Below are positions 25,865 through 60,711 of a DNA stretch of 64,000 bases, in pieces (the first letter of the stretch is position 1; every line of letters begins with the position of its first letter). The position numbers were made by a program, and so were the translations under genes. The notes beneath the pieces are model-generated. The model worked only from the letters and a program-made list of their open reading frames with translations, was not told the DNA's origin and ran no database searches. The stretch is from sequence record LR756501.1. The stretch is one strand, 5' to 3'.

Positions 25865-26104
25865 TTATTTGTTCCAATTCTCTTCTCCGTAGGGGTCCAA
25901 GTCACTAAAAATTCTTTCACCTTCTTCATTTTTCACCATACTCTCATACTTGAAATCTAGATAGAATATTTTACCTATTGGTAATCTTTCCATTCTACTA
26001 TCTCTATTAAATGGTATAGTAGCCTTGTAAGGGTTTCTATTTCCCATCATATTAGGATTATATCTTGGTAGATTTGTTTCCTTTAAATTTAATTTTTTCA
26101 TCAT
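25865..26104 (-). CDS. Small protein with C-terminal DPYGEENW tag
   Basis: Ends SDLDPYGEENWNK. Confidence 0.7.
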   Translation of the reverse strand: MMKKLNLKETNLPRYNPNMMGNRNPYKATIPFNRDSRMERLPIGKIFYLDFKYESMVKNEEGERIFSDLDPYGEENWNK

Positions 26105-35044: not shown

Positions 35045-36325
35045 TTAACCTGAATAAACTAAATAAAAACCATTATTACTTTTCTCTAACTCTATCAACC
35101 CTAATAAATCAAATATATCTCTCTGCACCTTTAACCCGTTTCCAGATTTGTAACCAGTTGGATAACACTTATCTACAAGACTTTCAGCTTCGTAAAAATC
35201 TTCTAAATCATCAATCAATGTATTAACAGATTTATATTCTTGTTTTGGTTGCATATCAGGACCTTTGTTACATTCTAACATAAATGGGTTCAAGTCTTTA
35301 TCAACTACGAAATCCATTCCGAACACTTGTGCACAAAGATTGTTGTTTAAATTGCCTTTTCTACCAAGACTTGGTTTAACAGCGTCTATCACCATAGCCA
35401 CCTTGTTGTTTATTCTTTCAAAGAGCACGTCAGGATTATCATATCCGTTATCTAATAGATATGTTCTTAACTGTCTCATAGTCATTGGATTTTCATCGTA
35501 GACTTTAAGATCCAAATTGAAACTAGTAATGTTGTTTTCGAAATCAAGAGTTGAGTCGTCGTATTCTTTATTGGAGTAGATACATGTGGCGTATTTATTA
35601 ATGTGTGCTTCTACTACTCCATTTTTTATGGTGAGGAGAAGGTACATTCTTATATTAAGTTTTCTTTTATTTATAAGGAGAAGGTCTCTCTTGTAATTTT
35701 GAACAAGAGTGTAATTTTCTTTAGATTCAAGAATATCTTTGAGTTCTCTTGTGAGTTTTAATCCTTCTTTCCTTTGTCTTCTTGATTTGAGAATATAAAT
35801 TTCATTTTGTTTATATTGTTCTTTAAACAATTGAACGTGGTCGTCATTTGATAGGACAAATGTTTCTGGTAAAAGTTGGCTAGCACCTACTCTACCGTAA
35901 GCTTTTTCAAGAATGTTCCAAAGACAGGTTTTACCAACTAAGTCGTCACATCCCTGCACACCAAATATGATTTGATTTTCGTTATGAGGTGTTAATTTTT
36001 CTAAATCAATTTCAATTCTATTATAACCATTTGGTATATAGATGTTCCAATCATCGTCAAAATCTAGTTGATAGAATTTATATTTTCTAAGGATTTTAAT
36101 GAAACCAGATACACTGGAAGAATGACTATCACAATAGAATGATTTATATTTGCGAGTATCTTCTCTAACGAGATCTGAGAACTTTGGTAAGTTCATATAT
36201 TTGTGATAAATATCAGAAATCATATCTGTGATTTCGTGATTTCTATCAAGGAGGAAATCAAAAGTTTCAGGTTTTTTTTGAAACTTACTTATAATTTTTT
36301 CTAATAAAGACACAGTATCAGACAT
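35045..36325 (-). CDS. Tubulin-tyrosine ligase (TTL/TTLL) family ATP-grasp amino-acid ligase
   Basis: LLPETFVL, YILKSRRQRKEGLKLT, LVQNYKRDLLLINKRKLNIRMYLL, VFGMDFVVDKDLNPFMLECNKGPDM. Confidence 0.85.
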   Translation of the reverse strand: MSDTVSLLEKIISKFQKKPETFDFLLDRNHEITDMISDIYHKYMNLPKFSDLVREDTRKYKSFYCDSHSSSVSGFIKILRKYKFYQLDFDDDWNIYIPNGYNRIEIDLEKLTPHNENQIIFGVQGCDDLVGKTCLWNILEKAYGRVGASQLLPETFVLSNDDHVQLFKEQYKQNEIYILKSRRQRKEGLKLTRELKDILESKENYTLVQNYKRDLLLINKRKLNIRMYLLLTIKNGVVEAHINKYATCIYSNKEYDDSTLDFENNITSFNLDLKVYDENPMTMRQLRTYLLDNGYDNPDVLFERINNKVAMVIDAVKPSLGRKGNLNNNLCAQVFGMDFVVDKDLNPFMLECNKGPDMQPKQEYKSVNTLIDDLEDFYEAESLVDKCYPTGYKSGNGLKVQRDIFDLLGLIELEKSNNGFYLVYSG

Positions 36326-36331
36326 TATTTT

Positions 36332-36691
36332 TTATTTAGAAGTATCTAACGTATTAATTATTCTGTTAATTTTTTGCTTATTTAATCCCTTTTTCTTATT
36401 CTTGTACTTATTCTTTAACATTTTATAGAGATACTTACCGTCCTTATATTTTTTAATCTTATCGTCATTCACTTTTAAGATGTATATTGTTTTGTCTCCA
36501 CATCCGTAATACATCTCTCTAAAGACTTTTATATCTATATCACCCTCCCATACTTCTTCTTCAAATTTATCCTCTGGTGTATCAGACACCTTTATAAAAA
36601 TACCAAACCCGTCTTCGTGTTTAGATTTAGTAACAAGTAAATCACTATTTAGAGAAATAGTATCTCTAAGTAATTGTTTCAATTTCTTCAT
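36332..36691 (-). CDS. Hypothetical protein
   Basis: 119 aa ORF. Confidence 0.6.
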   Translation of the reverse strand: MKKLKQLLRDTISLNSDLLVTKSKHEDGFGIFIKVSDTPEDKFEEEVWEGDIDIKVFREMYYGCGDKTIYILKVNDDKIKKYKDGKYLYKMLKNKYKNKKKGLNKQKINRIINTLDTSK

Positions 36692-37386: not shown

Positions 37387-39003
<1,617 letters not shown>

Positions 39004-40029: not shown

Positions 40030-40824
40030 TTACATATAATATATTCCGTGTCCACCATATTCGTCCCAATCATTCATATAACCGTACCTATCCATTTCAT
40101 TTCCAACCTTTTTATCACCGATTGGAAGTTCTTCCCATTTAATTAAACAAGAAGCCTTTGCTAGATTTTCAAGAAACTTAATATCAGTTCTTTCAGAATG
40201 GCTATGTTCGTTGAAGTAACCAACTGATAAGTTAGTACACTCTGGCACAACACCGAAAAAAGTTGCACTATCAGTAAAAATACCAGTATTATCTGGACGA
40301 TAGTTAAGACCATGAGAATTAAGCTGCTCGGCTAAGGTGAGCGCAAATTCCTGACTACAACCACGTCTACCAATTTGGTGAGTGATAACAGAATGATAAG
40401 CCCTTCTATCAAAGGATACCATTCTATCAAAGTCTGAGAAGAATTCTCTGTCTTTACGTAAAATCGCGTCAGAACCTACACATCCACTTTCTTCACCCTG
40501 GAAGAAGTAGTAAGTTCCTGGAATTTTCCTATAAATCATATACAGCATAATAGCCATACCGCACTTGTCGTCTGCACTTAGTACAGTTTTTCCGTCTGTT
40601 GAAATCATGTTACCGTTGATAACGTGGGTAACTTTCTCGTAACGACCGCAAGCTGTGTCCATGTGGCAAGTGAAGATAGTTCTGCTACCTTTACCGATTG
40701 TAATATAATAGTTCCCGCACCCGTCTTCGATTATATCTTTTGGGAAGAATTTTTCCAATCTGTTTTCCATTCCGTGTGGAATGGTATATTCTGTTAGTTC
40801 TAAAAATAGTTTTTTAATGTTCAT
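40030..40824 (-). CDS. Zn-dependent M28/M20-family peptidase-like protein
   Basis: CHMDT, LSADDKCG, GEESGCVGS, SFDRR, TNLSVGYFNEH. Confidence 0.85.
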   Translation of the reverse strand: MNIKKLFLELTEYTIPHGMENRLEKFFPKDIIEDGCGNYYITIGKGSRTIFTCHMDTACGRYEKVTHVINGNMISTDGKTVLSADDKCGMAIMLYMIYRKIPGTYYFFQGEESGCVGSDAILRKDREFFSDFDRMVSFDRRAYHSVITHQIGRRGCSQEFALTLAEQLNSHGLNYRPDNTGIFTDSATFFGVVPECTNLSVGYFNEHSHSERTDIKFLENLAKASCLIKWEELPIGDKKVGNEMDRYGYMNDWDEYGGHGIYYM

Positions 40825-41107
40825 CTTTAAGTTTATTTATTAGTTCAATTAATATATCGCCGTGACAAGGTTTTGGACTACACCAACAACCTAATGTCTT
40901 TCCCTCTAATTCCCCTAAAGAACTAAGTAAATGAGGTTGATTTAATATCCATTCTTTATATTTAGTTATAGCTTCTTTTCTTGTATCTACAAGAAATTCT
41001 GCTTTAGTTTGTTTGTCTTTAATGTGTGTAAATGGATTTCCCCATTTCGAAGGTCTTCCAATGTACACATCATATTTATCTCTCTTACAATGTACTACTT
41101 TGGTCAT
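40814..41107 (-). CDS. DUF4326 family protein
   Basis: VVHCKRDKYDVYIGRPSKWGNPF..LEGKTLGCWCSPKPCHGDIL; start moved to MTKVV. Confidence 0.88.
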   Translation of the reverse strand: MTKVVHCKRDKYDVYIGRPSKWGNPFTHIKDKQTKAEFLVDTRKEAITKYKEWILNQPHLLSSLGELEGKTLGCWCSPKPCHGDILIELINKLKDEH

Positions 41108-41155
41108 TTTATTTAATCTTTTGCAAAAATACAATAATTAATCTAAATAAAAAAA

Positions 41156-42038: not shown

Positions 42039-42389
42039 TTAAAATGATTGCTCTGCAAATCCACCTTCAAACCAGTAATACGTATCACCAGGTTTTGGTA
42101 ATGGATCTACTCCTTTATTTTCTTTTCCGCTTCTATTATGACCCTTCATTTCGTCAATAGTGTAATATCCTTTCATAGAAAGGGCACCTTGTACAAAACC
42201 TAACCACCTGTTAGCTTTTTCTTTTTTATCTGGGTTATCTAATATATTTGGAATTTCATTAACCATCCACAAAATGTGGTTCATATCGTAATCGTTACTA
42301 AATGGTTCACGGTGTTTTGGAGTAAATCCTTCTTTCCTCAAAAGTTCACCGTACTCTACACATATTTCTGCTATTTGATTCTTGTCCAT
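42039..42389 (-). CDS. Hypothetical protein
   Basis: HILWMVNEI..EKANRWLGFVQGAL pattern. Confidence 0.7.
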   Translation of the reverse strand: MDKNQIAEICVEYGELLRKEGFTPKHREPFSNDYDMNHILWMVNEIPNILDNPDKKEKANRWLGFVQGALSMKGYYTIDEMKGHNRSGKENKGVDPLPKPGDTYYWFEGGFAEQSF

Positions 42390-42453
42390 TGTCGTGTATT
42401 TTTTATCTTTTTTTATACAAAATATTAGGAAAAGTTTTTTAATATATAGAGTT

Positions 42454-43179
42454 ATGATAAAAGATTATTTCACATATATAAAAGAATCTATTGAAGAAGA
42501 AAAATTTAAAATAGGTGATAAAGTTATCATTAATGGTATAGTTGACGATACTGGGTTTGATAATCAACCAGATACAATAGACGATATATCAGAAGATAGA
42601 GTTGATACCAATATGGACAAAAATGGTCAATGTGATATGTACCCATATAAAGGTATAACTTATCATATGGCTGAAGCACAATGGTGGGTATCTCCATATA
42701 ATTTGAAGAAAGGTAATTATAAAAGAGTATTCAGTAAAGAAGATCCTTACGGTGAAGAAAACTGGGATAAAGAAACCAACGAGGCCAAGAAAGTTAAAGG
42801 AGAAGAGATATTGATGCCTTTAATGGGGAACGAATTTCAATTAGGTGTTAATCATTCAATAAGAGATATCATGGGTGGAAGAATGAATGAAATTGGAAGA
42901 AACGTTGTTATCGATCTTTTAGGTAAAACAAAAGGTAAAAAGGTGTGGTTTGTTAATACGAAGTTAGGTAAAAATCTTAAAAAAGAAAGAATATCAGAGG
43001 GGTTTTACTGGATGGAAGATAGAGAGAACGGTTGGCTAGGTTGGTCACTTATGATGATAGGCACTAAAAAAGATTATTTTGTTAATGTAACTAGACAAAT
43101 TGGATATTATACAGAAGGGGAAAAATATAAAAGAACAATATCACCACTTGATCCTTACGGTGAAGAAGTATGGGATTAA
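42454..43179 (+). CDS. Two-module protein, each module ending in DPYGEExW
   Basis: Start moved to MIKDYFTYIKES after TAATATATA; tags at 42742 and 43150. Confidence 0.75.
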   Translation: MIKDYFTYIKESIEEEKFKIGDKVIINGIVDDTGFDNQPDTIDDISEDRVDTNMDKNGQCDMYPYKGITYHMAEAQWWVSPYNLKKGNYKRVFSKEDPYGEENWDKETNEAKKVKGEEILMPLMGNEFQLGVNHSIRDIMGGRMNEIGRNVVIDLLGKTKGKKVWFVNTKLGKNLKKERISEGFYWMEDRENGWLGWSLMMIGTKKDYFVNVTRQIGYYTEGEKYKRTISPLDPYGEEVWD

Positions 43180-43196
43180 AAAAGAAAAATAAAGAT

Positions 43197-43571
43197 ATGG
43201 TAAAAAATTATTTACAATTCATAAACGAAGCAGATGCACCTCCACCAGCACCAGCTCCACAAGCACCACCAGCTCAGCCTCCTGCACAACCAGCTCCAGC
43301 TGCACAACCACCAGCTCAACCAGCTCAAAGTGGTTCAACTCAAAATGAACTATCTGCACAAGAACCAGCACCACAAGGACAATCAACAGAAGAAAAATCT
43401 GGTGATTTATCTAACTATAACAACGAAGGTGCAACTAAATTTCCTGATACTGTTAAGAAAATGGTGGACTTAATAAAAGACTTGGATAAGGAACAACTTA
43501 TTAAATTAAGAACTCTCATAGCAGAGTTGAAAAGTATCAACGACGCCAAAGCTGAAATCGGAAAACTATGA
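43197..43571 (+). CDS. Pro/Ala/Gln-rich protein with N-terminal KNYLQFINE tag
   Basis: Start moved to MVKNYLQFINEA. Confidence 0.7.
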   Translation: MVKNYLQFINEADAPPPAPAPQAPPAQPPAQPAPAAQPPAQPAQSGSTQNELSAQEPAPQGQSTEEKSGDLSNYNNEGATKFPDTVKKMVDLIKDLDKEQLIKLRTLIAELKSINDAKAEIGKL

Positions 43572-43945
43572 TAAAAATGTTCGAACAATTCAAAGAAAGT
43601 CTAGAAGATCCTTATGGAGAAGAAATAGAAGGTGAACTACCAGTACAAGATAACGATAAAGATATTCCAGATGATGAAATGGTAGATATTGATGATCTCT
43701 ACGACGTTATGGGCGACTTGATGTGGAAAGCCAATGTGCTCTATTGTAAATTTAGTGGTGAAAATCCAGATGAAGTTGATAACGCTCCTTCACCCGAAGA
43801 CGCTATGGAATCAATGGATGAAATACCCGAAGATAGTGAATATTACGAAGAGGCTACAAACATTTCAAATGAAATAGGTACACTCCAAGAACAAATTGAC
43901 GAAAAAGAAGCAGAAGAAGCTTTTGAAGACGATGACGAAGATTAA
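43568..43945 (+). CDS. Very acidic protein with KMFEQF and DPYGEE tags
   Basis: MIKMFEQFKESLEDPYGEE; D/E-rich throughout. Confidence 0.7.
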   Translation: MIKMFEQFKESLEDPYGEEIEGELPVQDNDKDIPDDEMVDIDDLYDVMGDLMWKANVLYCKFSGENPDEVDNAPSPEDAMESMDEIPEDSEYYEEATNISNEIGTLQEQIDEKEAEEAFEDDDED

Positions 43946-45642
43946 TCTTCTCTTATCATCGAATAACCATTCACTTTCTCCATCCTTATAACTCTATCAA
44001 AATGAACTATATCGAAAGTTAAAGGTGTCGCTATAATTACATTCATTTTATTTCTCTTCGAGAAGTTTCTTAATACCTTTAATATCAAATCTACGTTCTC
44101 ATCATCCACAGAAGCAAAGACTTCATCCATAAAAAGTATGTTAGTTCTCTTATTCATACTTATTACCATTTCCATATAAGATAAAGCAATAGCCACATTT
44201 ATCTTTCTAGCTTCACCTGTTGATAAAGACTCTACATGAATATCATCTATAAACCTCTCCTTTATTATAGCGTCAAAATTATCATCTAACCTCACATTAA
44301 ACATTGACTCTAAATCAATTAAATACTTCGCTAAATGTTCATTAATTGGATCAACAACAGTCTTTATAATACCTCTCCTTATACCCTTCTCTGATAAAAG
44401 TTCTACCAACTTCTCTTGCTTAACAATTTTCTCACCTAATTTATCAAACGCTTTACTGTATTTAATGTTTTCACTTTCAAGTAGTTCCACATTTCTATTT
44501 AATTCTACGATAGATACTGAATCTGTATTTCTATCGTATTCGTTTCTAAGGTCTTTAATTTTATCTTTAAGGTAATCAAATCTAATCTCTTTTTGATTAA
44601 GTTCGTTCATTACTTGTTTTCTTTCATCTACTTTGGCTGATACTTCTATTCTAACTTCGTTGTAACTCTTTTTGAGTTCTATTAAACTATTCTTAGCTTC
44701 TTCGTATTCTTGAAGAAGTTTTTTAAGTTCTTTGTCGTGAAAATCGTCTGTTAGTACAGAACCACAGAAAGGGCAACTGCCTTCTTTGAATATATCAATC
44801 TTCTTACTTAACTCACCTAATAAGAATTCGTCTTCTGTAATTTTACTTTTCTTAATATTATAAATATCACTTTTACTTCTTATCTCTGGTATTAACCCAC
44901 TAACAACCTCTTTCAAATCATTTATATCATTCTTTAACGGTATGAATTCAGTCTTATATCCTGTAATTTCTTCTTTAATCTTCTGTTTATCAATACTTCC
45001 ACTGTTCTCTAATATGATTTGAACGTTATTTTTATAAGTTCCTATTGTATTTGTATTTGTAAGTATGAGTGATTCTAATTTTTCTTTTCTTTTATATGAG
45101 TTCTTTAATAGTTCTTTAGCGATGGATAAATAACTATCCATTTCATCTATGTTAAATAATTTATTAAGAAGTTTCTTTTTAGTTTCAGTATCAAGATTAA
45201 TGAAGTTTGCGAAGTCAGCCAGGTTGAGGGATACAAGAGATTTATAAGTATTATATTCTATACCAATTATATCATCTTTTTCTTGTTGTTGCATAACTTC
45301 ATATCTATCAGTTCTATCTGCGCCGTTGATAGATATTTTGAAACCTTTAGGTGTAAGTCTTCTGTTTATAATAACGTTATCGTTGTTCCAGTTAACAAAA
45401 TCAATTTCAGTTTCGAGATTTTTATTGGTTCTATTGGGTAGGATATAGTTAGGAACTCTTTTGGTATTTTTACCTCTAACTATATTAAAGAGGGCAAAGT
45501 CAATAGACTCAAGGAGGCTGGACTTACCTTTACCGTTGGTACCAGTAAGCAGAATAAGTGAGCCTTCTTCTGAGAAGGTTAATTTTTGTAAGTTATTACC
45601 ATAACTTTTGAAGTTTCTTAACGATATTGAGTTTATTATCAT
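43942..45642 (-). CDS. sbcC: Recombination exonuclease ATPase subunit (T4 gp46/SbcC/Rad50)
   Basis: ISLRNFKSYG, GTNGKGKSS, Zn hook CPFC, LSTGE, LFMDEVF, coiled coil. Confidence 0.92.
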   Translation of the reverse strand: MIINSISLRNFKSYGNNLQKLTFSEEGSLILLTGTNGKGKSSLLESIDFALFNIVRGKNTKRVPNYILPNRTNKNLETEIDFVNWNNDNVIINRRLTPKGFKISINGADRTDRYEVMQQQEKDDIIGIEYNTYKSLVSLNLADFANFINLDTETKKKLLNKLFNIDEMDSYLSIAKELLKNSYKRKEKLESLILTNTNTIGTYKNNVQIILENSGSIDKQKIKEEITGYKTEFIPLKNDINDLKEVVSGLIPEIRSKSDIYNIKKSKITEDEFLLGELSKKIDIFKEGSCPFCGSVLTDDFHDKELKKLLQEYEEAKNSLIELKKSYNEVRIEVSAKVDERKQVMNELNQKEIRFDYLKDKIKDLRNEYDRNTDSVSIVELNRNVELLESENIKYSKAFDKLGEKIVKQEKLVELLSEKGIRRGIIKTVVDPINEHLAKYLIDLESMFNVRLDDNFDAIIKERFIDDIHVESLSTGEARKINVAIALSYMEMVISMNKRTNILFMDEVFASVDDENVDLILKVLRNFSKRNKMNVIIATPLTFDIVHFDRVIRMEKVNGYSMIRED

Positions 45643-45901
45643 TTAATACTTTATCTATTAATTCTGTTCTAGTTTTATTTTTCCATTCACCAACCGAAAT
45701 TAAACATTCACCTTCCCAACCACATTTACATGTATAATATATTTTAACTTTAGATGTTAAATTAAAAATGTAATCAACTGATCCACAAGACGGACAAACG
45801 TAATCTTCATTCTTAGCTAATACTGAATAACTTGTAAAAGTACCATCCGTCCACTCTTCGGGTTTATGTTTATTTAGCATACTATAATAGTCAAATTCCA
45901 T
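45596..45901 (-). CDS. Zn-ribbon protein with RTELIDKVL tag
   Basis: CPSCG..CKCGWEG. Confidence 0.7.
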   Translation of the reverse strand: MEFDYYSMLNKHKPEEWTDGTFTSYSVLAKNEDYVCPSCGSVDYIFNLTSKVKIYYTCKCGWEGECLISVGEWKNKTRTELIDKVLNDNKLNIVKKLQKLW

Positions 45902-46136
45902 CTAACACCTTGTCTATTAATTTTGTTCTCTTAATATTCTTATATACATTTTCATTCATTAATTCATTTCCAACGTGTCCACATCCTAAACATTCGTAAC
46001 TACTTATAACATGAATTTTTACGTTGTCTCTTATTTCTTCCTTACTTTCGAATTTCCATTCAGTAGATCCGCAAATAGGACAAACACTACCTACCATACC
46101 AAATATTTCAGCGAATAAATTATATTTTTTCTTCAT
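45891..46136 (-). CDS. Zn-ribbon protein with RTKLIDKVL tag
   Basis: CPICG..CLGCG. Confidence 0.7.
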   Translation of the reverse strand: MKKKYNLFAEIFGMVGSVCPICGSTEWKFESKEEIRDNVKIHVISSYECLGCGHVGNELMNENVYKNIKRTKLIDKVLDGI

Positions 46137-49077: not shown

Positions 49078-49424
49078 GCCCACTAGCACATTTTCCGGGA
49101 GGACCAAGATATTGGGGTGATGCCCAGATATACTTAAATCCAATAGTTTTATGTTTCGATAATAAAGAATGCGATAAATTATTGAAAATTGAAATACCAA
49201 ATCCAATAGATAAAAAAACTTCATCAATTAAAGCGTCTTTTAAAGAAGATGACGAAATGAGAAATACTCTTTTAAAAGAAAATCCAAAGGATTTAAGAAT
49301 AGAATTCTATGATAGAGAAGGTAAAACTATAAGAATCATTTACATGCGAGAATGTAAATGTGTTGAAATGCCTAATAACGAGGTTGAAATTCAATTAGAA
49401 TCTTGGGAAGATAAATATTTTTAA
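49074..49424 (+). CDS. Short degenerate tail-tube-like paralog
   Basis: MSPLAHF..IYLN..IEFYDREGKTIRIIYMREC parallels the upstream gene. Confidence 0.55.
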   Translation: MSPLAHFPGGPRYWGDAQIYLNPIVLCFDNKECDKLLKIEIPNPIDKKTSSIKASFKEDDEMRNTLLKENPKDLRIEFYDREGKTIRIIYMRECKCVEMPNNEVEIQLESWEDKYF

Positions 49425-49702
49425 TCTAAAGTTAAATCTCTAACGTCATCTTCGACTTGATCGTAAAAATCTGGATATTCGTCTTCTATAATAGATAGAA
49501 TTTCGTCTGCTTTATCCATTCTATAATCTAAGTCGTCACTTCCAAGTAATTTATCTAATTTCTTGTCTATACTCTTGTTTTTCAGAAGTTTAAAGAATCT
49601 GATTATATTACCGTCGTATTCTATTTCACCTGACCATTTTTCTTCACCGTAAGGGTCTAGTTCGCTTTTATCTGCGTTTTCGTTAAATTTCTTTATTTTC
49701 AT
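49421..49702 (-). CDS. Small acidic protein with KKFNE and DPYGEEKW tags
   Basis: MKIKKFNENADKSELDPYGEEKW. Confidence 0.7.
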   Translation of the reverse strand: MKIKKFNENADKSELDPYGEEKWSGEIEYDGNIIRFFKLLKNKSIDKKLDKLLGSDDLDYRMDKADEILSIIEDEYPDFYDQVEDDVRDLTLD

Positions 49703-55070: not shown

Positions 55071-55910
55071 GTGAAGAATTATAAACAATTCGTAAACGAA
55101 TATTACACATGGGATGATGATGTTACTGAAAAAACAATAGATCTTGGTGTTCTCTATGAACAACAAGAGGGAAACTCTGATCACATATTGCAAATTTTAC
55201 AATATGAATTTAGACCAATACAATCAAATGATGAATATAAAGTTATCAATTTAGTCGGTAAGTATAGTAAAGTTAATTTAACATTGGATAATCGTGCGCA
55301 ATATCCCGGAGGTATAGAAATGGATGAAAAAGGACTCCTATTCTCATCAAGATTAAGAGACAGATTAACATTCAGACGTTTAACATTTGATCTTTTTCCC
55401 AGATTTCTTTTTAAAATTAAAATATTAAAAAGAAGATTTATCCCTGAAGATCCATATGGAGAAGAAGAATGGGATATAAATGAATCCTATTATCCAGATT
55501 TATCACCATATAATTATAGTTGGGAGATGCCTGAGTGTGTTAATATTGGTTGGCTAGATGATAAACACGATTTTGAAAAAGGCGAAGTTCCTGAAGGTTT
55601 TGTAGATAAGTTGGTAAAAATGCCAAGGTTTGTACAACATTGTGGTTATCACAATTGTCCATTCTGTGAAGGCGGAAGAGATACATGGAGCAGTAGTATT
55701 AAATTGGCTATAGGAGACGGTGTAGTTTACCTTTTCCCAGAATTGACGAAGCACTATATATCTAAACATCATTATAAACCACCACAAGAATTTATTGACG
55801 CTGTATTAAAAATGGAAAATATGTCTGATGGTGATGCCCATAGATACATGAATAATATCATGTTAAGACATAAGGAACATTTTGATAAAATGTTCCATAG
55901 AAAGAGATAG
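55071..55910 (+). CDS. Two-module protein: unknown domain plus DPYGEEEW, then a copy of the 54620 domain
   Basis: Tag at 55449; exact 21-nt and 29-nt matches to the upstream gene; ends in TAG. Confidence 0.75.
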   Translation: MKNYKQFVNEYYTWDDDVTEKTIDLGVLYEQQEGNSDHILQILQYEFRPIQSNDEYKVINLVGKYSKVNLTLDNRAQYPGGIEMDEKGLLFSSRLRDRLTFRRLTFDLFPRFLFKIKILKRRFIPEDPYGEEEWDINESYYPDLSPYNYSWEMPECVNIGWLDDKHDFEKGEVPEGFVDKLVKMPRFVQHCGYHNCPFCEGGRDTWSSSIKLAIGDGVVYLFPELTKHYISKHHYKPPQEFIDAVLKMENMSDGDAHRYMNNIMLRHKEHFDKMFHRKR

Positions 55911-60138: not shown

Positions 60139-60711
60139 ATGTTAACGAAATTTGAATTATTTTTGGAAGGTAAATGGTTTGGAGGCGGTAGAGCAGCAAA
60201 GGCTGGCCCTAATGCTCCAGTTGTTGTTCCTAATCAAGAGCAAGCAAAGAAAAAAGTTTACGATAAACCAGATGATGATATAATAGAATGGATGATTAAC
60301 TATCTTAAAAAGACTGGTGTTGATGAGACAAAATTAACTGATGATTATAATTTATCTCCAAAAACTTTTGAACCTAAACAATGGTGGGAATATAAATTTA
60401 TAAAACAAGGAAAGACTAATCCATTGGATCCTTACGGTGAAGAAGATTGGCCAGGAGCTACTGGTAATAAACAGATTAATATAAGAATAGAAAAGAGATC
60501 TCTACTTGGTGACAAATATGAATATTATTATAGGTTCAAAGTTAATGATAATGATTTAGATGTATCTGAAAAATATATTAAAAGAATAGTAGAATTACTT
60601 GACGCCCCAAAAGAAGCAAGAAGGTTGGCGAGAGAAAAAAGGGAGGCTGAAGCTAAGAAATCCAAGAATGACGCAATAAGAAGAGATTTATTTGAAAAAA
60701 GATCGAAATAA
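60139..60711 (+). CDS. Hypothetical protein with TKFELFLE and internal DPYGEEDW tags
   Basis: Follows TAATATATA; tag at 60427. Confidence 0.75.
   Translation: MLTKFELFLEGKWFGGGRAAKAGPNAPVVVPNQEQAKKKVYDKPDDDIIEWMINYLKKTGVDETKLTDDYNLSPKTFEPKQWWEYKFIKQGKTNPLDPYGEEDWPGATGNKQINIRIEKRSLLGDKYEYYYRFKVNDNDLDVSEKYIKRIVELLDAPKEARRLAREKREAEAKKSKNDAIRRDLFEKRSK

What the first reader, a model, noticed from the sequence alone, without database searches (positions are those of the whole stretch)
35045..36325. Tubulin-tyrosine-ligase-family enzyme in a bacteriophage
Seen: full TTL-type ATP-grasp motifs (QxY..LLI.KRKxNxRxY; FGMDF..D....MLExNxGP). Known: TTL/TTLL enzymes add Tyr, Glu or Gly to acidic tails (the alpha-tubulin tail contains GEE) and are mainly eukaryotic, with homologs in giant viruses. 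Inference: phage-directed post-translational modification. Candidate substrates include a PhuZ-like tubulin elsewhere in the genome, host FtsZ or bS6-like tails, or, speculatively, the GEE-containing DPYGEE tags and acidic proteins here.
Basis: partly seen in the sequence, partly recalled or inferred. Interest (0 to 1): 0.68.

Follow-up and report, generated by a model that had tools for sequence, protein, structure and literature searches.

The report
Tubulin-ligase-type enzyme in a huge phage
The largest curated phage genome (735 kb, Bacteroidota host predicted) carries an intact enzyme of the tubulin-tyrosine-ligase family whose nearest relatives are in giant viruses of eukaryotes; the phage has no tubulin, so the enzyme must modify some other acidic target.

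Summary
Window 35045-36325 (-) is a 426-aa ORF that matches Pfam TTL (PF03133) at 79.9 bits against a cut-off of 20.1. RimK- and YheC/D-type models stay below their cut-offs. A confident model (pLDDT 89) matches TTLL6 and TTL. The ATP/Mg residues are invariant across 65 relatives.

The window is part of LR756501.1, the 735 kb Mahaphage. It has one TTL copy, no tubulin or FtsZ-like gene, and no M14 carboxypeptidase.

The protein belongs to a virus-only branch of the TTL superfamily. About 40 relatives come from huge-phage contigs and form one clade (100/98 support). The next relatives (about 40% identity) are giant-virus TTLs. Animal TTLLs are far away, and prokaryote genomes are essentially empty. 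Sister versus nested placement is unresolved (AU p = 0.19).

The active site is the same in phage and giant-virus members. It has Arg at the position that marks branch-initiating TTLLs, and an invariant Lys where TTLL6 uses His362 for the acceptor carboxylate. An invariant Pro replaces a Lys that all glutamylases need, so the added amino acid is unknown. Phage members alone carry a conserved 33-residue insert next to the catalytic loop.

Acidic-aromatic tags occur in all three TTL-bearing phage lineages and in none of four TTL-less Mahaphages. This is a lead, not proof.

The parts
35045..36325 (-). TTL-family ATP-grasp ligase gene, 426 aa (P0001). It is the only copy in the 735 kb genome.
   Evidence: ORF; PF03133 at 79.9 bits; single copy; AF2 plus Foldseek to TTLL6 and TTL
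35228..35956 (-). Stretch matched by the Pfam TTL model (residues 124-366). It holds K132 and K180 (ATP lysines), the Q184-R185-K186 loop, the Q209/Y211 hinge, and K222/N224/R226/Y228.
   Evidence: residue roles taken from the TTLL6 paper
35264..35314 (-). Catalytic metal-binding stretch from D338 to E351-x-N353-K354. K354 is invariant and sits at the TTLL6 His362 (acceptor carboxylate) position.
   Evidence: phmmer alignment to TTLL6; hhalign to TTLL2 at probability 99.5; invariant in 65 sequences
35135..35233 (-). Phage-clade-specific 33-residue insert (residues 365-397), directly after the catalytic loop. E375, F377, Y378, E381, Y388, P389, G391, Y392, G395, N396 and G397 are near-invariant in 38 phage-clade sequences. 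The insert is absent from all 22 giant-virus rows.
   Evidence: modelled with pLDDT about 90 as a helix plus a loop
36158..36325 (-). N-terminal about 56 residues: predicted helices of low confidence (pLDDT 53-61), outside the TTL core. They are partly gapped in giant-virus relatives.
37387..39000 (-). Phage GroEL-type chaperonin (537 aa), upstream in the same co-directional gene array. GroEL-(small ORFs)-TTL order is kept in relatives whose TTL is at least 54% identical, but not in more distant TTL-bearing phages.
36332..36691 (-). Small ORF (119 aa) immediately upstream of TTL, with no family match. A homologue stands at the same place only in the closest relative (L003).
43568..43945 (+). 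125-aa protein of pI 4.05 with DPYGEE at residues 14-19 and an extremely acidic C-terminal tail. It is the best in-window candidate substrate, and this is inference only.
42382..43179 (+). 265-aa ORF with two DPYGEE-x-W tags (42742-42759 and 43150-43167). Each closes a module, and the second lies at the C-terminus.
25880..25897 (-). DPYGEE tag at the C-terminus of a 79-aa ORF (25865-26104).
49640..49657 (-). DPYGEE tag at residues 16-21 of a 93-aa acidic ORF (49421-49702).
55449..55466 (+). Internal DPYGEE tag in a 279-aa ORF (55071-55910).
60427..60444 (+). Internal DPYGEE tag in a 190-aa ORF (60139-60711).

Best explanation
The gene encodes a catalytically competent amino-acid ligase of the tubulin-tyrosine-ligase (TTL/TTLL) superfamily. 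It belongs to a virus-specific branch shared by giant viruses of eukaryotes and by one clade of huge phages.

Like all TTL-type ATP-grasp enzymes, it should use ATP and Mg to activate a carboxylate as an acyl-phosphate and then join the amino group of a free amino acid to it.

Neither the phage nor its bacterial host has eukaryotic tubulin, and the phage has no tubulin homologue. So the acceptor must be another acidic protein segment made during infection. Two acceptor-side residues fit a Glu side chain in an acidic stretch, that is, branch-type ligation: Arg185 at the position that marks branch-initiating TTLLs, and invariant Lys354 where TTLL6 uses His362.

The donor amino acid is not assignable. 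Canonical glutamate recognition is disrupted, because the TTLL6 Lys283 position holds invariant Pro280.

The best current candidate for the acceptor, at roughly 0.25-0.3, is the family of acidic-aromatic tags (here DPYGEE-x-W). These tags are carried by 94 phage proteins and are found only in TTL-bearing phage lineages. A host protein is about as likely.

Shown: family membership, fold, conserved catalytic residues, single copy, absence of tubulin, phylogenetic position, and tag co-occurrence. Inferred: activity, protein acceptor, branch chemistry, and substrate identity.
For: Family and fold: PF03133 at 79.9 bits. Model pLDDT 89.3. Foldseek to TTLL6 and TTL at E about 1e-17. The BFVD top hits are giant-virus 'TTL family' proteins, with TMt 0.87 to Marseillevirus LCMAC201.

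Catalytic competence: K132, K180, Q209, R226, D338, E351 and N353 are invariant in 65 sequences. They map onto TTLL6 K125 and K174, the hinge, and the Mg triad, both by phmmer and by hhalign at probability 99.5. Residue roles come from 10.1101/2020.06.07.139295.

Long-term purifying selection: 105 relatives span 96% down to 30% identity, and 157 clusters reach E <= 1e-30 in the exhaustive search.

A resident phage gene, not an assembly chimera: synteny holds in independent assemblies L003, L004 and L011-L014. G+C is the same as the surroundings.

No tubulin.

Phylogeny: the phage clade has 100/98 support and lies beside or within giant-virus TTLs.

Active-site signature shared by both virus groups, plus the phage-only insert.

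Tags: 109 sites in 94 ORFs. TTL-bearing G001-G004 have DP[YW]GE[DE] tags, and G005 has a DFDDDWEWEE analogue. Four TTL-less complete Mahaphages have none.
Against: No activity, expression or substrate data exist, and no RNA run holds the locus. Residue mapping rests on alignments at about 17-22% identity. The TTLL6 R241 and N264 equivalents are ambiguous. Model coordinates could not be inspected.

All characterised family members act on tubulin or a few other eukaryotic proteins, so transferring the chemistry to a bacterial setting is an extrapolation.

Giant-virus TTL loci carry no such tags, so the enzyme family does not need them.

The TTL-bearing phages form one clade. The tag/TTL association may therefore reflect a single shared ancestry event. 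The G005 analogue and the wider regex were defined after seeing the data.

No gene is a conserved neighbour across all phage TTL loci. The complex prediction could not be run.
Confidence: 0.6

Rival explanations
1. The enzyme modifies a host protein, for example the acidic C-terminal region of FtsZ (the bacterial tubulin homologue), ribosomal protein bS6 or another acidic-tailed host factor. This would be part of host takeover. The tags would be unrelated.
For: The giant-virus relatives presumably act on host tubulin (discussed in PMC11915834). FtsZ is tubulin's homologue. The active-site signature is identical in phage and giant-virus members, which suggests similar acceptor chemistry. The phage has no tubulin of its own. 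No conserved phage-encoded partner gene lies next to TTL.
Against: No host genome or host protein could be examined. The enzyme lacks any microtubule-binding domain of the kind that follows the core in some TTLLs. The phage clade has a conserved insert next to the active site that giant-virus enzymes lack, which suggests a change of target. This rival does not explain why acidic tags track TTL presence.
Confidence: 0.25
2. The enzyme modifies a phage-encoded tubulin (PhuZ-like), as the reader first proposed.
For: Some huge phages in the same study encode PhuZ (PMC7162821).
Against: PF00091 (Tubulin/FtsZ) and PF13809 (Tubulin_2) give no match at E <= 1 anywhere in the 735,411-bp record in six frames, while the controls ring in 13 and 7 of 14 genomes.
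Confidence: 0.02
3. It is not a protein modifier. Instead it ligates an amino acid to a small molecule or free peptide, like glutathione synthetase, D-Ala-D-Ala ligase or RimK acting on free glutamate.
For: ATP-grasp enzymes often have small substrates. The canonical donor-binding Lys283 and possibly Arg241 of TTLLs are not conserved, so substrate binding differs from known TTLLs.
Against: Every characterised PF03133 member is a protein ligase (general knowledge of the family). Small-molecule ATP-grasp families score below threshold. The full three-domain TTL architecture is kept.
Confidence: 0.08
4. The gene is a decaying or non-functional passenger recently picked up from a giant virus, or an assembly artefact.
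For: Its nearest non-phage relatives are giant-virus genes. It is absent from the four other complete Mahaphage genomes.
Against: The frame is intact. All catalytic residues are invariant over a phage clade that has diverged to about 40% identity. The locus is syntenic in several independent metagenome assemblies. Local G+C of 0.316 equals the genome's. A clade-specific conserved insert exists.
Confidence: 0.03

Closest known systems
Giant-virus (Nucleocytoviricota) TTL-family proteins, for example those of Marseillevirus LCMAC201, Gaeavirus, Hokovirus, ChoanoV1 and CroV. This is the 'deep viral clade' of TTL described in PMC11915834.
   Same: Identity is 37-45% over the core at E = 1e-50 to 1e-73. 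The fold is the same (TMt 0.87, rmsd 3.0 to LCMAC201). The active-site signature is identical: K132, K180, Q184-R185-K186, N224, R226, C248-I249-Y250, T267-S268, N279-P280, D338, E351, N353 and K354. They form one virus-only family, separated from animal TTLL2 by a very long branch.
   Different: The phage proteins form their own clade (100/98). They carry a conserved 33-residue insert after the catalytic loop and a longer N-terminus. They sit in tailed-phage genomes whose hosts have no tubulin. No member of either group has been characterised biochemically.
Eukaryotic TTLL glutamylases (TTLL6, TTLL7, TTLL4, TTLL2)
   Same: Three-domain ATP-grasp core. ATP lysines, hinge and Mg triad are conserved. 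Arg at the TTLL6 Gln180 position, as in branch-initiating TTLL4 and TTLL2. The QLRTYL stretch is identical to sponge TTLL2.
   Different: Identity is only about 17-22%. The Lys283 position, invariant in all glutamylases, holds invariant Pro280. The His362 position holds invariant Lys. The Arg241 equivalent is unclear. There is no cationic microtubule-binding domain, and no tubulin is available.
Tubulin tyrosine ligase (TTL proper)
   Same: Similar size with no extra domains. Foldseek TMt is 0.73-0.76. PDB sequence match at E = 1e-7.
   Different: TTL has Glu at the Lys283 position and Tyr at the Lys377 position to hold the donor tyrosine. Here those positions hold Pro and a basic or unaligned residue. 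The tubulin-dimer interface cannot be relevant in a bacterium.
RimK, YheC/D and other phage ATP-grasp proteins
   Same: The ATP-grasp fold and the C-terminal metal-binding motif.
   Different: Pfam scores are below cut-off. Phage ATP-grasp proteins in BFVD match only at TM about 0.35. The ATP-grasp of the 462 kb Mahaphage belongs to the R2K/Ddl type and is not TTL.

Membership tests
TTL/TTLL superfamily (Pfam PF03133) | Match to the family HMM above the curated gathering score | tested here: met
   79.9 bits against 20.1, E = 2.5e-22, residues 124-366; 80.5 bits in the six-frame genome search
TTL/TTLL superfamily (Pfam PF03133) | Three-domain TTL-type ATP-grasp fold | tested here: met
   AF2 pLDDT 89.3 and pTM 0.84; Foldseek to TTLL6 (6vzt) at E = 7e-18 and to TTL at TMt 0.73-0.76
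TTL/TTLL superfamily (Pfam PF03133) | ATP- and Mg-binding residues (TTLL6 K125, K174, the Q-x-Y hinge, K215/R219, and the D/E/N triad) | tested here: met
   K132, K180, Q209/Y211, K222/R226 and D338/E351/N353 are invariant or nearly so in 65 sequences. The TTLL6 N264 equivalent is ambiguous: the loop is two residues shorter, with N265/T267/S268 conserved.
TTL/TTLL superfamily (Pfam PF03133) | Tubulin as substrate | tested here: not met
   No PF00091 or PF13809 gene in the 735 kb phage, and the host is a bacterium. Enzyme activity itself is not testable with these tools.
TTLL glutamylases | Two invariant lysines (TTLL6 K283 and K377) that hold the donor glutamate's gamma-carboxylate | tested here: not met
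   The K283 position holds invariant Pro280 in both alignments, anchored by the identical QLRTYL stretch. The K377 equivalent is uncertain: K361 is conserved and K365 is not. Residue roles.
TTL proper (tyrosine ligase) | Glu at the K283 position and Tyr at the K377 position for the donor tyrosine | tested here: not met
   Pro280 at the first position; no aligned Tyr at the second
TTLL glycylases | Hydrophobic or polar residues at both donor positions | tested here: inconclusive
   Pro280 fits. The second position cannot be aligned with confidence. There is no sequence match to the TTLL3 structure 5vlq.
Branch-initiating ('initiase') TTLLs | Arg instead of Gln at the TTLL6 Gln180 position | tested here: met
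   R185 aligns to that position by phmmer and to the invariant Arg of TTLL2 by hhalign. It is conserved in 89% of phage rows and 95% of giant-virus rows. The loop is one residue shorter, so the register is not certain.
RimK / YheC-D ATP-grasp | Family HMM above cut-off | tested here: not met
   ATPgrasp_YheCD scores 18.4 bits against 26.8. There is no RimK hit and no NCBIfam hit.
Virus-specific TTL clade (giant viruses) | Groups with giant-virus TTLs to the exclusion of cellular TTLLs | tested here: met
   Trees. IMG/VR relatives are almost all GVMAG bins. Giant-virus gene contexts. Only animal TTLL2 served as the cellular outgroup, so other eukaryotic subfamilies were not sampled in the tree.

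The most novel reading that the evidence does not exclude
A clade of huge phages runs its own 'tubulin-code-like' tagging system inside bacteria. A TTL-type writer, sharing ancestry with giant-virus enzymes and refitted with a phage-specific insert, adds amino-acid branches to the Glu residues of a short acidic-aromatic tag. In this genome the tag is DPYGEE-x-W. It stands at the N-terminus, at the C-terminus or between modules of about 94 otherwise unrelated phage proteins. This would be a proteome-wide, virus-encoded writer/tag pair with no known counterpart in phages.
Probability: 0.25. Interest if true: 0.9.

Novelty: new variant of a known kind. Interest (0 to 1): 0.68.

Why it matters
TTL/TTLL enzymes are regarded as eukaryotic machinery for writing the tubulin code, with copies in giant viruses that are assumed to target host microtubules. 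Three results change that picture. An intact, long-conserved clade of these enzymes exists in phages of bacteria. Its active site is identical to that of the giant-virus enzymes. The phage genome has no tubulin. Together these show that the family can work without tubulin, and they raise the possibility that the giant-virus enzymes are not tubulin modifiers either.

The finding also documents a gene family shared between the largest phages and the giant viruses of eukaryotes.

It gives a directly testable enzyme-substrate hypothesis for a striking peptide tag that is not described in the held literature and marks about 94 proteins of the largest curated phage genome.

I found no report of TTL-family genes in phages in the held literature. 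Among 50,697 GenBank phage records only this genome matches.

Tried and rejected
1. PhuZ or tubulin in the phage: searched with PF00091 and PF13809, nothing found. Rejected.

2. RimK or YheC/D identity: below cut-offs. Rejected.

3. A conserved neighbouring partner gene: GroEL adjacency holds only in close relatives, and no neighbour is shared with the distant TTL-bearing phages. The neighbours have no Pfam family except DUF4326. GroEL as a substrate is not supported.

4. An 'eraser' carboxypeptidase (Peptidase_M14): none in the phage or its relatives.

5. Bacterial origin: scanning 185,579 species genomes gave nothing with the single protein. With the alignment it gave only one match, at 28% identity, on a 4.4 kb contig of a Myxococcota MAG. 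That sequence is a long branch of uncertain place. These scans use family-specific peptide patterns, so distant bacterial TTL-like proteins could be missed.

6. Direction of transfer: with the eukaryote root, the phage clade branches among giant-virus lineages in all bootstrap trees. The AU test does not reject giant-virus monophyly (p = 0.186). Left open.

Not run, so there is no verdict.

8. Positive control for the NCLDV capsid search: the giant-virus records are not held. The negative result therefore stands without a control. Phage identity rests on the terminase matches, the gene contexts and the published curation.

9. PHROGs and NCBIfam: no informative match.

10. RNA evidence: no RNA run holds the locus.

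11. The marginal PF03133 match in the 462 kb Mahaphage is a generic R2K/Ddl-type ATP-grasp.

12. No other genetic code was needed, and the window has no N.
Full report
**1. What is there**

Window 35045-36325 on the minus strand is a single open frame of 426 codons with an ATG start.
- Q209-N-Y211
- LLLINKRKLNIRMY (215-228)
- FGMDFVVDKDLNPFMLECNKGP (335-356)

The Pfam TTL model PF03133 matches residues 124-366 at 79.9 bits (E = 2.5e-22, cut-off 20.1). The YheC/D and sugar-transfer ATP-grasp models touch only the last 30 residues and stay below their cut-offs. No RimK model appears. PHROGs and NCBIfam give nothing useful.

Against PDB sequences the best matches are TTLL6 (E = 3e-9) and TTL (E = 1e-7). 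An AlphaFold2 model built on 65 relatives is confident (pLDDT 89.3, pTM 0.84). Only the first ~55 residues are poorly defined. Foldseek puts TTLL6 and TTL first at E about 1e-17, with TM up to 0.76.

**2. Whose gene it is**

The window is identical to LR756501.1, an 'uncultured phage' of 735,411 bp (also deposited as LR756503.1). Window base 1 is record base 627,061. This is the 735 kb genome of Al-Shayeb et al. 2020. It belongs to the Mahaphage clade and has a predicted Bacteroidetes host (PMC7162821).

Independent checks agree:
- The record has two Terminase_6N matches.
- It has no NCLDV capsid match. No positive control could be run for that search.
- Its GroEL is closest to those of Bacteroides, Flavobacterium and Cellulophaga phages.
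- The DNA occurs in freshwater and lake metagenomes of four studies. No RNA run holds it.

The TTL gene lies in a long co-directional array. Its G+C (0.316) is the same as its surroundings. It is the only PF03133 match in the genome.

**3. Relatives**

The word-based search found 105 relatives, from 96% down to 30% identity. All are metagenomic and essentially all are unnamed.

I used the exhaustive search once, because placing the protein among phage, giant-virus, eukaryote and bacterial kin depends on relatives that a word search cannot reach. It gave 1,445 cluster representatives at E <= 1e-3 and 157 at E <= 1e-30.

Gene contexts sort the relatives into two kinds.

Phage-like contigs (39-96% identity):
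- The nearest relatives (TTL at least 54% identical: L003, L004, L011-L014) keep the block gp46/SbcC-like, 264-aa ORF, GroEL, small ORFs, TTL.
- Three more distant lineages (L005/L015 at 50%, L007/L016 at 41%, L009 at 39%) share no neighbour with the window.
- Those three do carry peptidoglycan hydrolases, PhoH and IS605/TnpB elements.

Giant-virus contigs (about 30-45% identity, 350-410 aa):
- Contexts include TFIIB, RING fingers, DVNP, fused DHFR-TS, RNase III and a eukaryote-type mannosyltransferase.
- In IMG/VR, 67 loci were found. The six best are phage-like, and almost all others are 'GVMAG' giant-virus bins.
- In the BFVD structure library, the only TTL-like matches are giant-virus 'TTL family' proteins. 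Phage entries match only as generic ATP-grasp folds.

Other collections are nearly empty:
- Among 50,697 GenBank phage records only this genome matches.
- Among 185,579 prokaryote species genomes the pattern scans found one weak match, on a 4.4 kb MAG contig.

**4. Phylogeny**

A careful IQ-TREE search (LG+C20, 65 rows, long-branch rows removed, animal TTLL2 as outgroup) gives these results:
- The 18 phage-context and phage-like sequences form one clade with 100/98 support, present in all bootstrap trees.
- The viral family as a whole is separated from TTLL2 by a very long branch.
- With that root, the phage clade branches among several giant-virus lineages in every bootstrap tree.
- The basal branches are weak, however. 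An AU test does not reject a tree with all giant-virus sequences together (delta lnL 5.95, p = 0.186).

So the phage enzymes and the 'deep viral clade' of TTL known from giant viruses (PMC11915834) are one family. The direction of transfer is open. Only TTLL2 represented cellular TTLLs, so the root is provisional.

**5. Active site**

The TTLL6 structural study (10.1101/2020.06.07.139295) assigns these roles:
- K125, K174 and N264 bind nucleotide.
- Q180 versus Arg decides alpha-elongation versus branch initiation.
- R241, K283 and K377 hold the donor glutamate.
- H362 holds the acceptor's free carboxylate.

Two alignments map these onto the phage protein: the phmmer alignment to TTLL6, and a profile-profile alignment of the viral family to TTLL2 (probability 99.5). 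The mapping is:

| TTLL6 residue | Phage protein | Note |
|---|---|---|
| K125 | K132 | ATP lysine |
| K174 | K180 | ATP lysine |
| hinge | Q209, Y211 | |
| (K/D/R/Y motif) | K222, N224, R226, Y228 | N224 replaces an Asp of TTLLs |
| Mg triad | D338, E351, N353 | |
| Q180 position | R185 | Arg, as in branch-initiating TTLLs |
| H362 position | K354 | invariant |
| K283 position | P280 | invariant; register fixed by the adjacent QLRTYL, identical to sponge TTLL2 |

The equivalents of R241, N264 and K377 are ambiguous.

All these residues are the same in the 38 phage-clade and the 22 giant-virus sequences examined. My reading is as follows. The enzyme is competent for ATP-dependent ligation. The acceptor side looks suited to a carboxylate-rich (Glu) acceptor and to branch-type chemistry. 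The donor is neither recognisably Glu (glutamylase signature broken) nor Tyr (TTL signature absent). These inferences rest on alignments at about 20% identity, and model coordinates could not be inspected.

The phage clade alone has a 33-residue insert (365-397) immediately after the catalytic E-x-N-K-G-P loop. Eleven of its positions are near-invariant. This marks a clade-specific change close to where substrates bind.

**6. What could the substrate be**

- Phage tubulin is excluded as far as HMMs can see. PF00091 and PF13809 find nothing in the whole record, while the controls ring.
- No M14 carboxypeptidase, the usual 'eraser' of TTLL marks, is encoded.
- GroEL adjacency is lineage-specific, and no neighbour is conserved across all phage TTL loci.
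- Host proteins, FtsZ among them, could not be tested.

**7. The tags**

- The coding pattern occurs 7 times in the window (0 expected) and 109 times in the genome (0 in the reversed-pattern control).
- Synonymous variation appears at every wobble position, so selection acts on the peptide.
- All 109 sites lie in ORFs, in 94 different ones.
- The consensus is K-R-x-F-(S/N)-(E/D)-L-DPYGEE-(N/D/E)-W-(E/D)-(D/E), with Trp at +2 in 103 of 109 sites.
- 21 sites lie within the first 30 residues. 41 lie within 12 residues of the C-terminus, usually with exactly four residues after GEE. The rest lie between modules.

Co-occurrence with TTL:

| Genome or record | TTL | Tag sites |
|---|---|---|
| W01 (this genome, 735 kb) | yes | 109 |
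| G001 | yes | 8 |
| G002 | yes | 26 |
| G003 | yes | 25 (exact pattern), 26 (loose pattern) |
| G004 (TTL 50% identical) | yes | 11, in a Trp form (DDPWGEE-x-WG) |
| G005 (TTL 41% identical) | yes | none of these, but a positional analogue (…FEEIDFDDDWEWEE) in about eight ORFs |
| Four complete TTL-less Mahaphages (636, 635, 642, 462 kb) | no | 0 |

Sources: for the TTL-bearing records, and for the TTL-less genomes.

- An unbiased word count on 200 kb from each of two TTL-less genomes finds only the clade-wide N-terminal leader MK[HY]LK…FE and no acidic-aromatic tag.
- Giant-virus TTL loci have no tags.

So the tag tracks TTL among these phages. Three caveats apply:
- The TTL-bearing phages are one clade, so this may be a single evolutionary event.
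- The G005 analogue and the broader regular expression were defined after seeing the data.
- The fragments cannot show absence.

The chemistry is coherent (invariant GEE, an acidic context, Arg185 and Lys354), but nothing ties enzyme and tag directly.

**8. Verdict**

- Right on family, on phage origin, on the giant-virus kinship and on probable post-translational modification.
- Wrong on a phage tubulin.
- Open on donor and acceptor.

This is a new variant of a known kind: a TTL-family ligase clade resident in huge phages, with a phage-specific insert and necessarily a non-tubulin target. I found no report of it in the held literature. The most novel reading still allowed is a phage-encoded writer/tag system. 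I put it at about one in four.

Noticed in passing
window 25880-25897(-), 42742-42759(+), 43150-43167(+), 43607-43624(+), 49640-49657(-), 55449-55466(+), 60427-60444(+); whole record LR756501.1: A short peptide tag, DPYGEE-x-W, recurs 109 times in 94 unrelated ORFs of the 735 kb genome. It stands at N-termini, at C-termini (41 sites) and between modules. Related phages use variants: DDPWGEE-x-WG in G004 and DFDDDWEWEE in G005. It is not described in the held literature. Its function is unknown; it may be a docking, targeting or modification motif.
   Followed up: partly
G004 (L204-L209), G005 (L199-L203), LR756504.1 (L215-L224), LR756502.1 (L225-L234); weaker in the window (e.g. 43568, 49702, 55071): Many small ORFs of these Mahaphage genomes start with a near-identical leader, MK[HY]LK(L/I/T)(Y/F)(E/K)… For example, 20 ORFs in 200 kb of LR756502.1 start with MKHLK. 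The leader occurs whether or not TTL is present. It could be a shared N-terminal signal or the mark of one large paralogous expansion.
   Followed up: partly
window 37387-39000 (-): The phage encodes a full-length GroEL-type chaperonin that ends in an unusual ...NQPPPPPMY tail instead of the Gly-Met-rich tail of bacterial GroEL. It is 57% identical to GroELs of Bacteroides phages. No GroES was looked for.
   Followed up: no
window 43170-43571 (+): A 133-aa ORF with a long Pro/Ala/Gln low-complexity stretch (…PPPAPAPQAPPAQPPAQPAPAAQPPAQPAQ…). It lies between two tag-bearing ORFs and is conserved in L003, L011 and L012.
   Followed up: no
window 45596-45901 (-) and 45891-46136 (-): Two adjacent paralogous small ORFs, each with two CxxC pairs (zinc-ribbon-like) and a shared C-terminal …TELIDKVL motif.
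   Followed up: no
window 40030-40824 (-): A 264-aa ORF conserved at about 70% identity in all close relatives and always between the gp46-like gene and GroEL. It contains HMDT and DDKCG motifs that recall metallopeptidases, but it has no Pfam match at E <= 0.01.
   Followed up: partly
window 40814-41134 (-); 43942-45642 (-): A DUF4326 protein (91.6 bits) and a T4 gp46/SbcC-like recombination nuclease subunit. The latter's nearest relatives are the other Mahaphages at about 30% identity, followed by cyanophage gp46.
   Followed up: no
L214:1261-2250 (LR756500.1, 462 kb Mahaphage): A different ATP-grasp protein (329 aa, best Pfam match R2K clade family 2 / D-Ala-D-Ala-ligase C-terminus) in a TTL-less relative.
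   Followed up: partly
L198 (JBCBLB010000768.1, Myxococcota MAG, 4.4 kb contig): This is the only match to the viral TTL family in the prokaryote genome collection, at 28% identity. It lies on a very short contig and on a long branch, so it may be a mis-binned viral or eukaryotic fragment.
   Followed up: no
L005/L006 6735-7959; L009 11419-12582 and 18855-20015: IS605-type TnpB/Cas12f-like genes sit within a few kb of the TTL gene in two of the distant TTL-bearing phage lineages.
   Followed up: no
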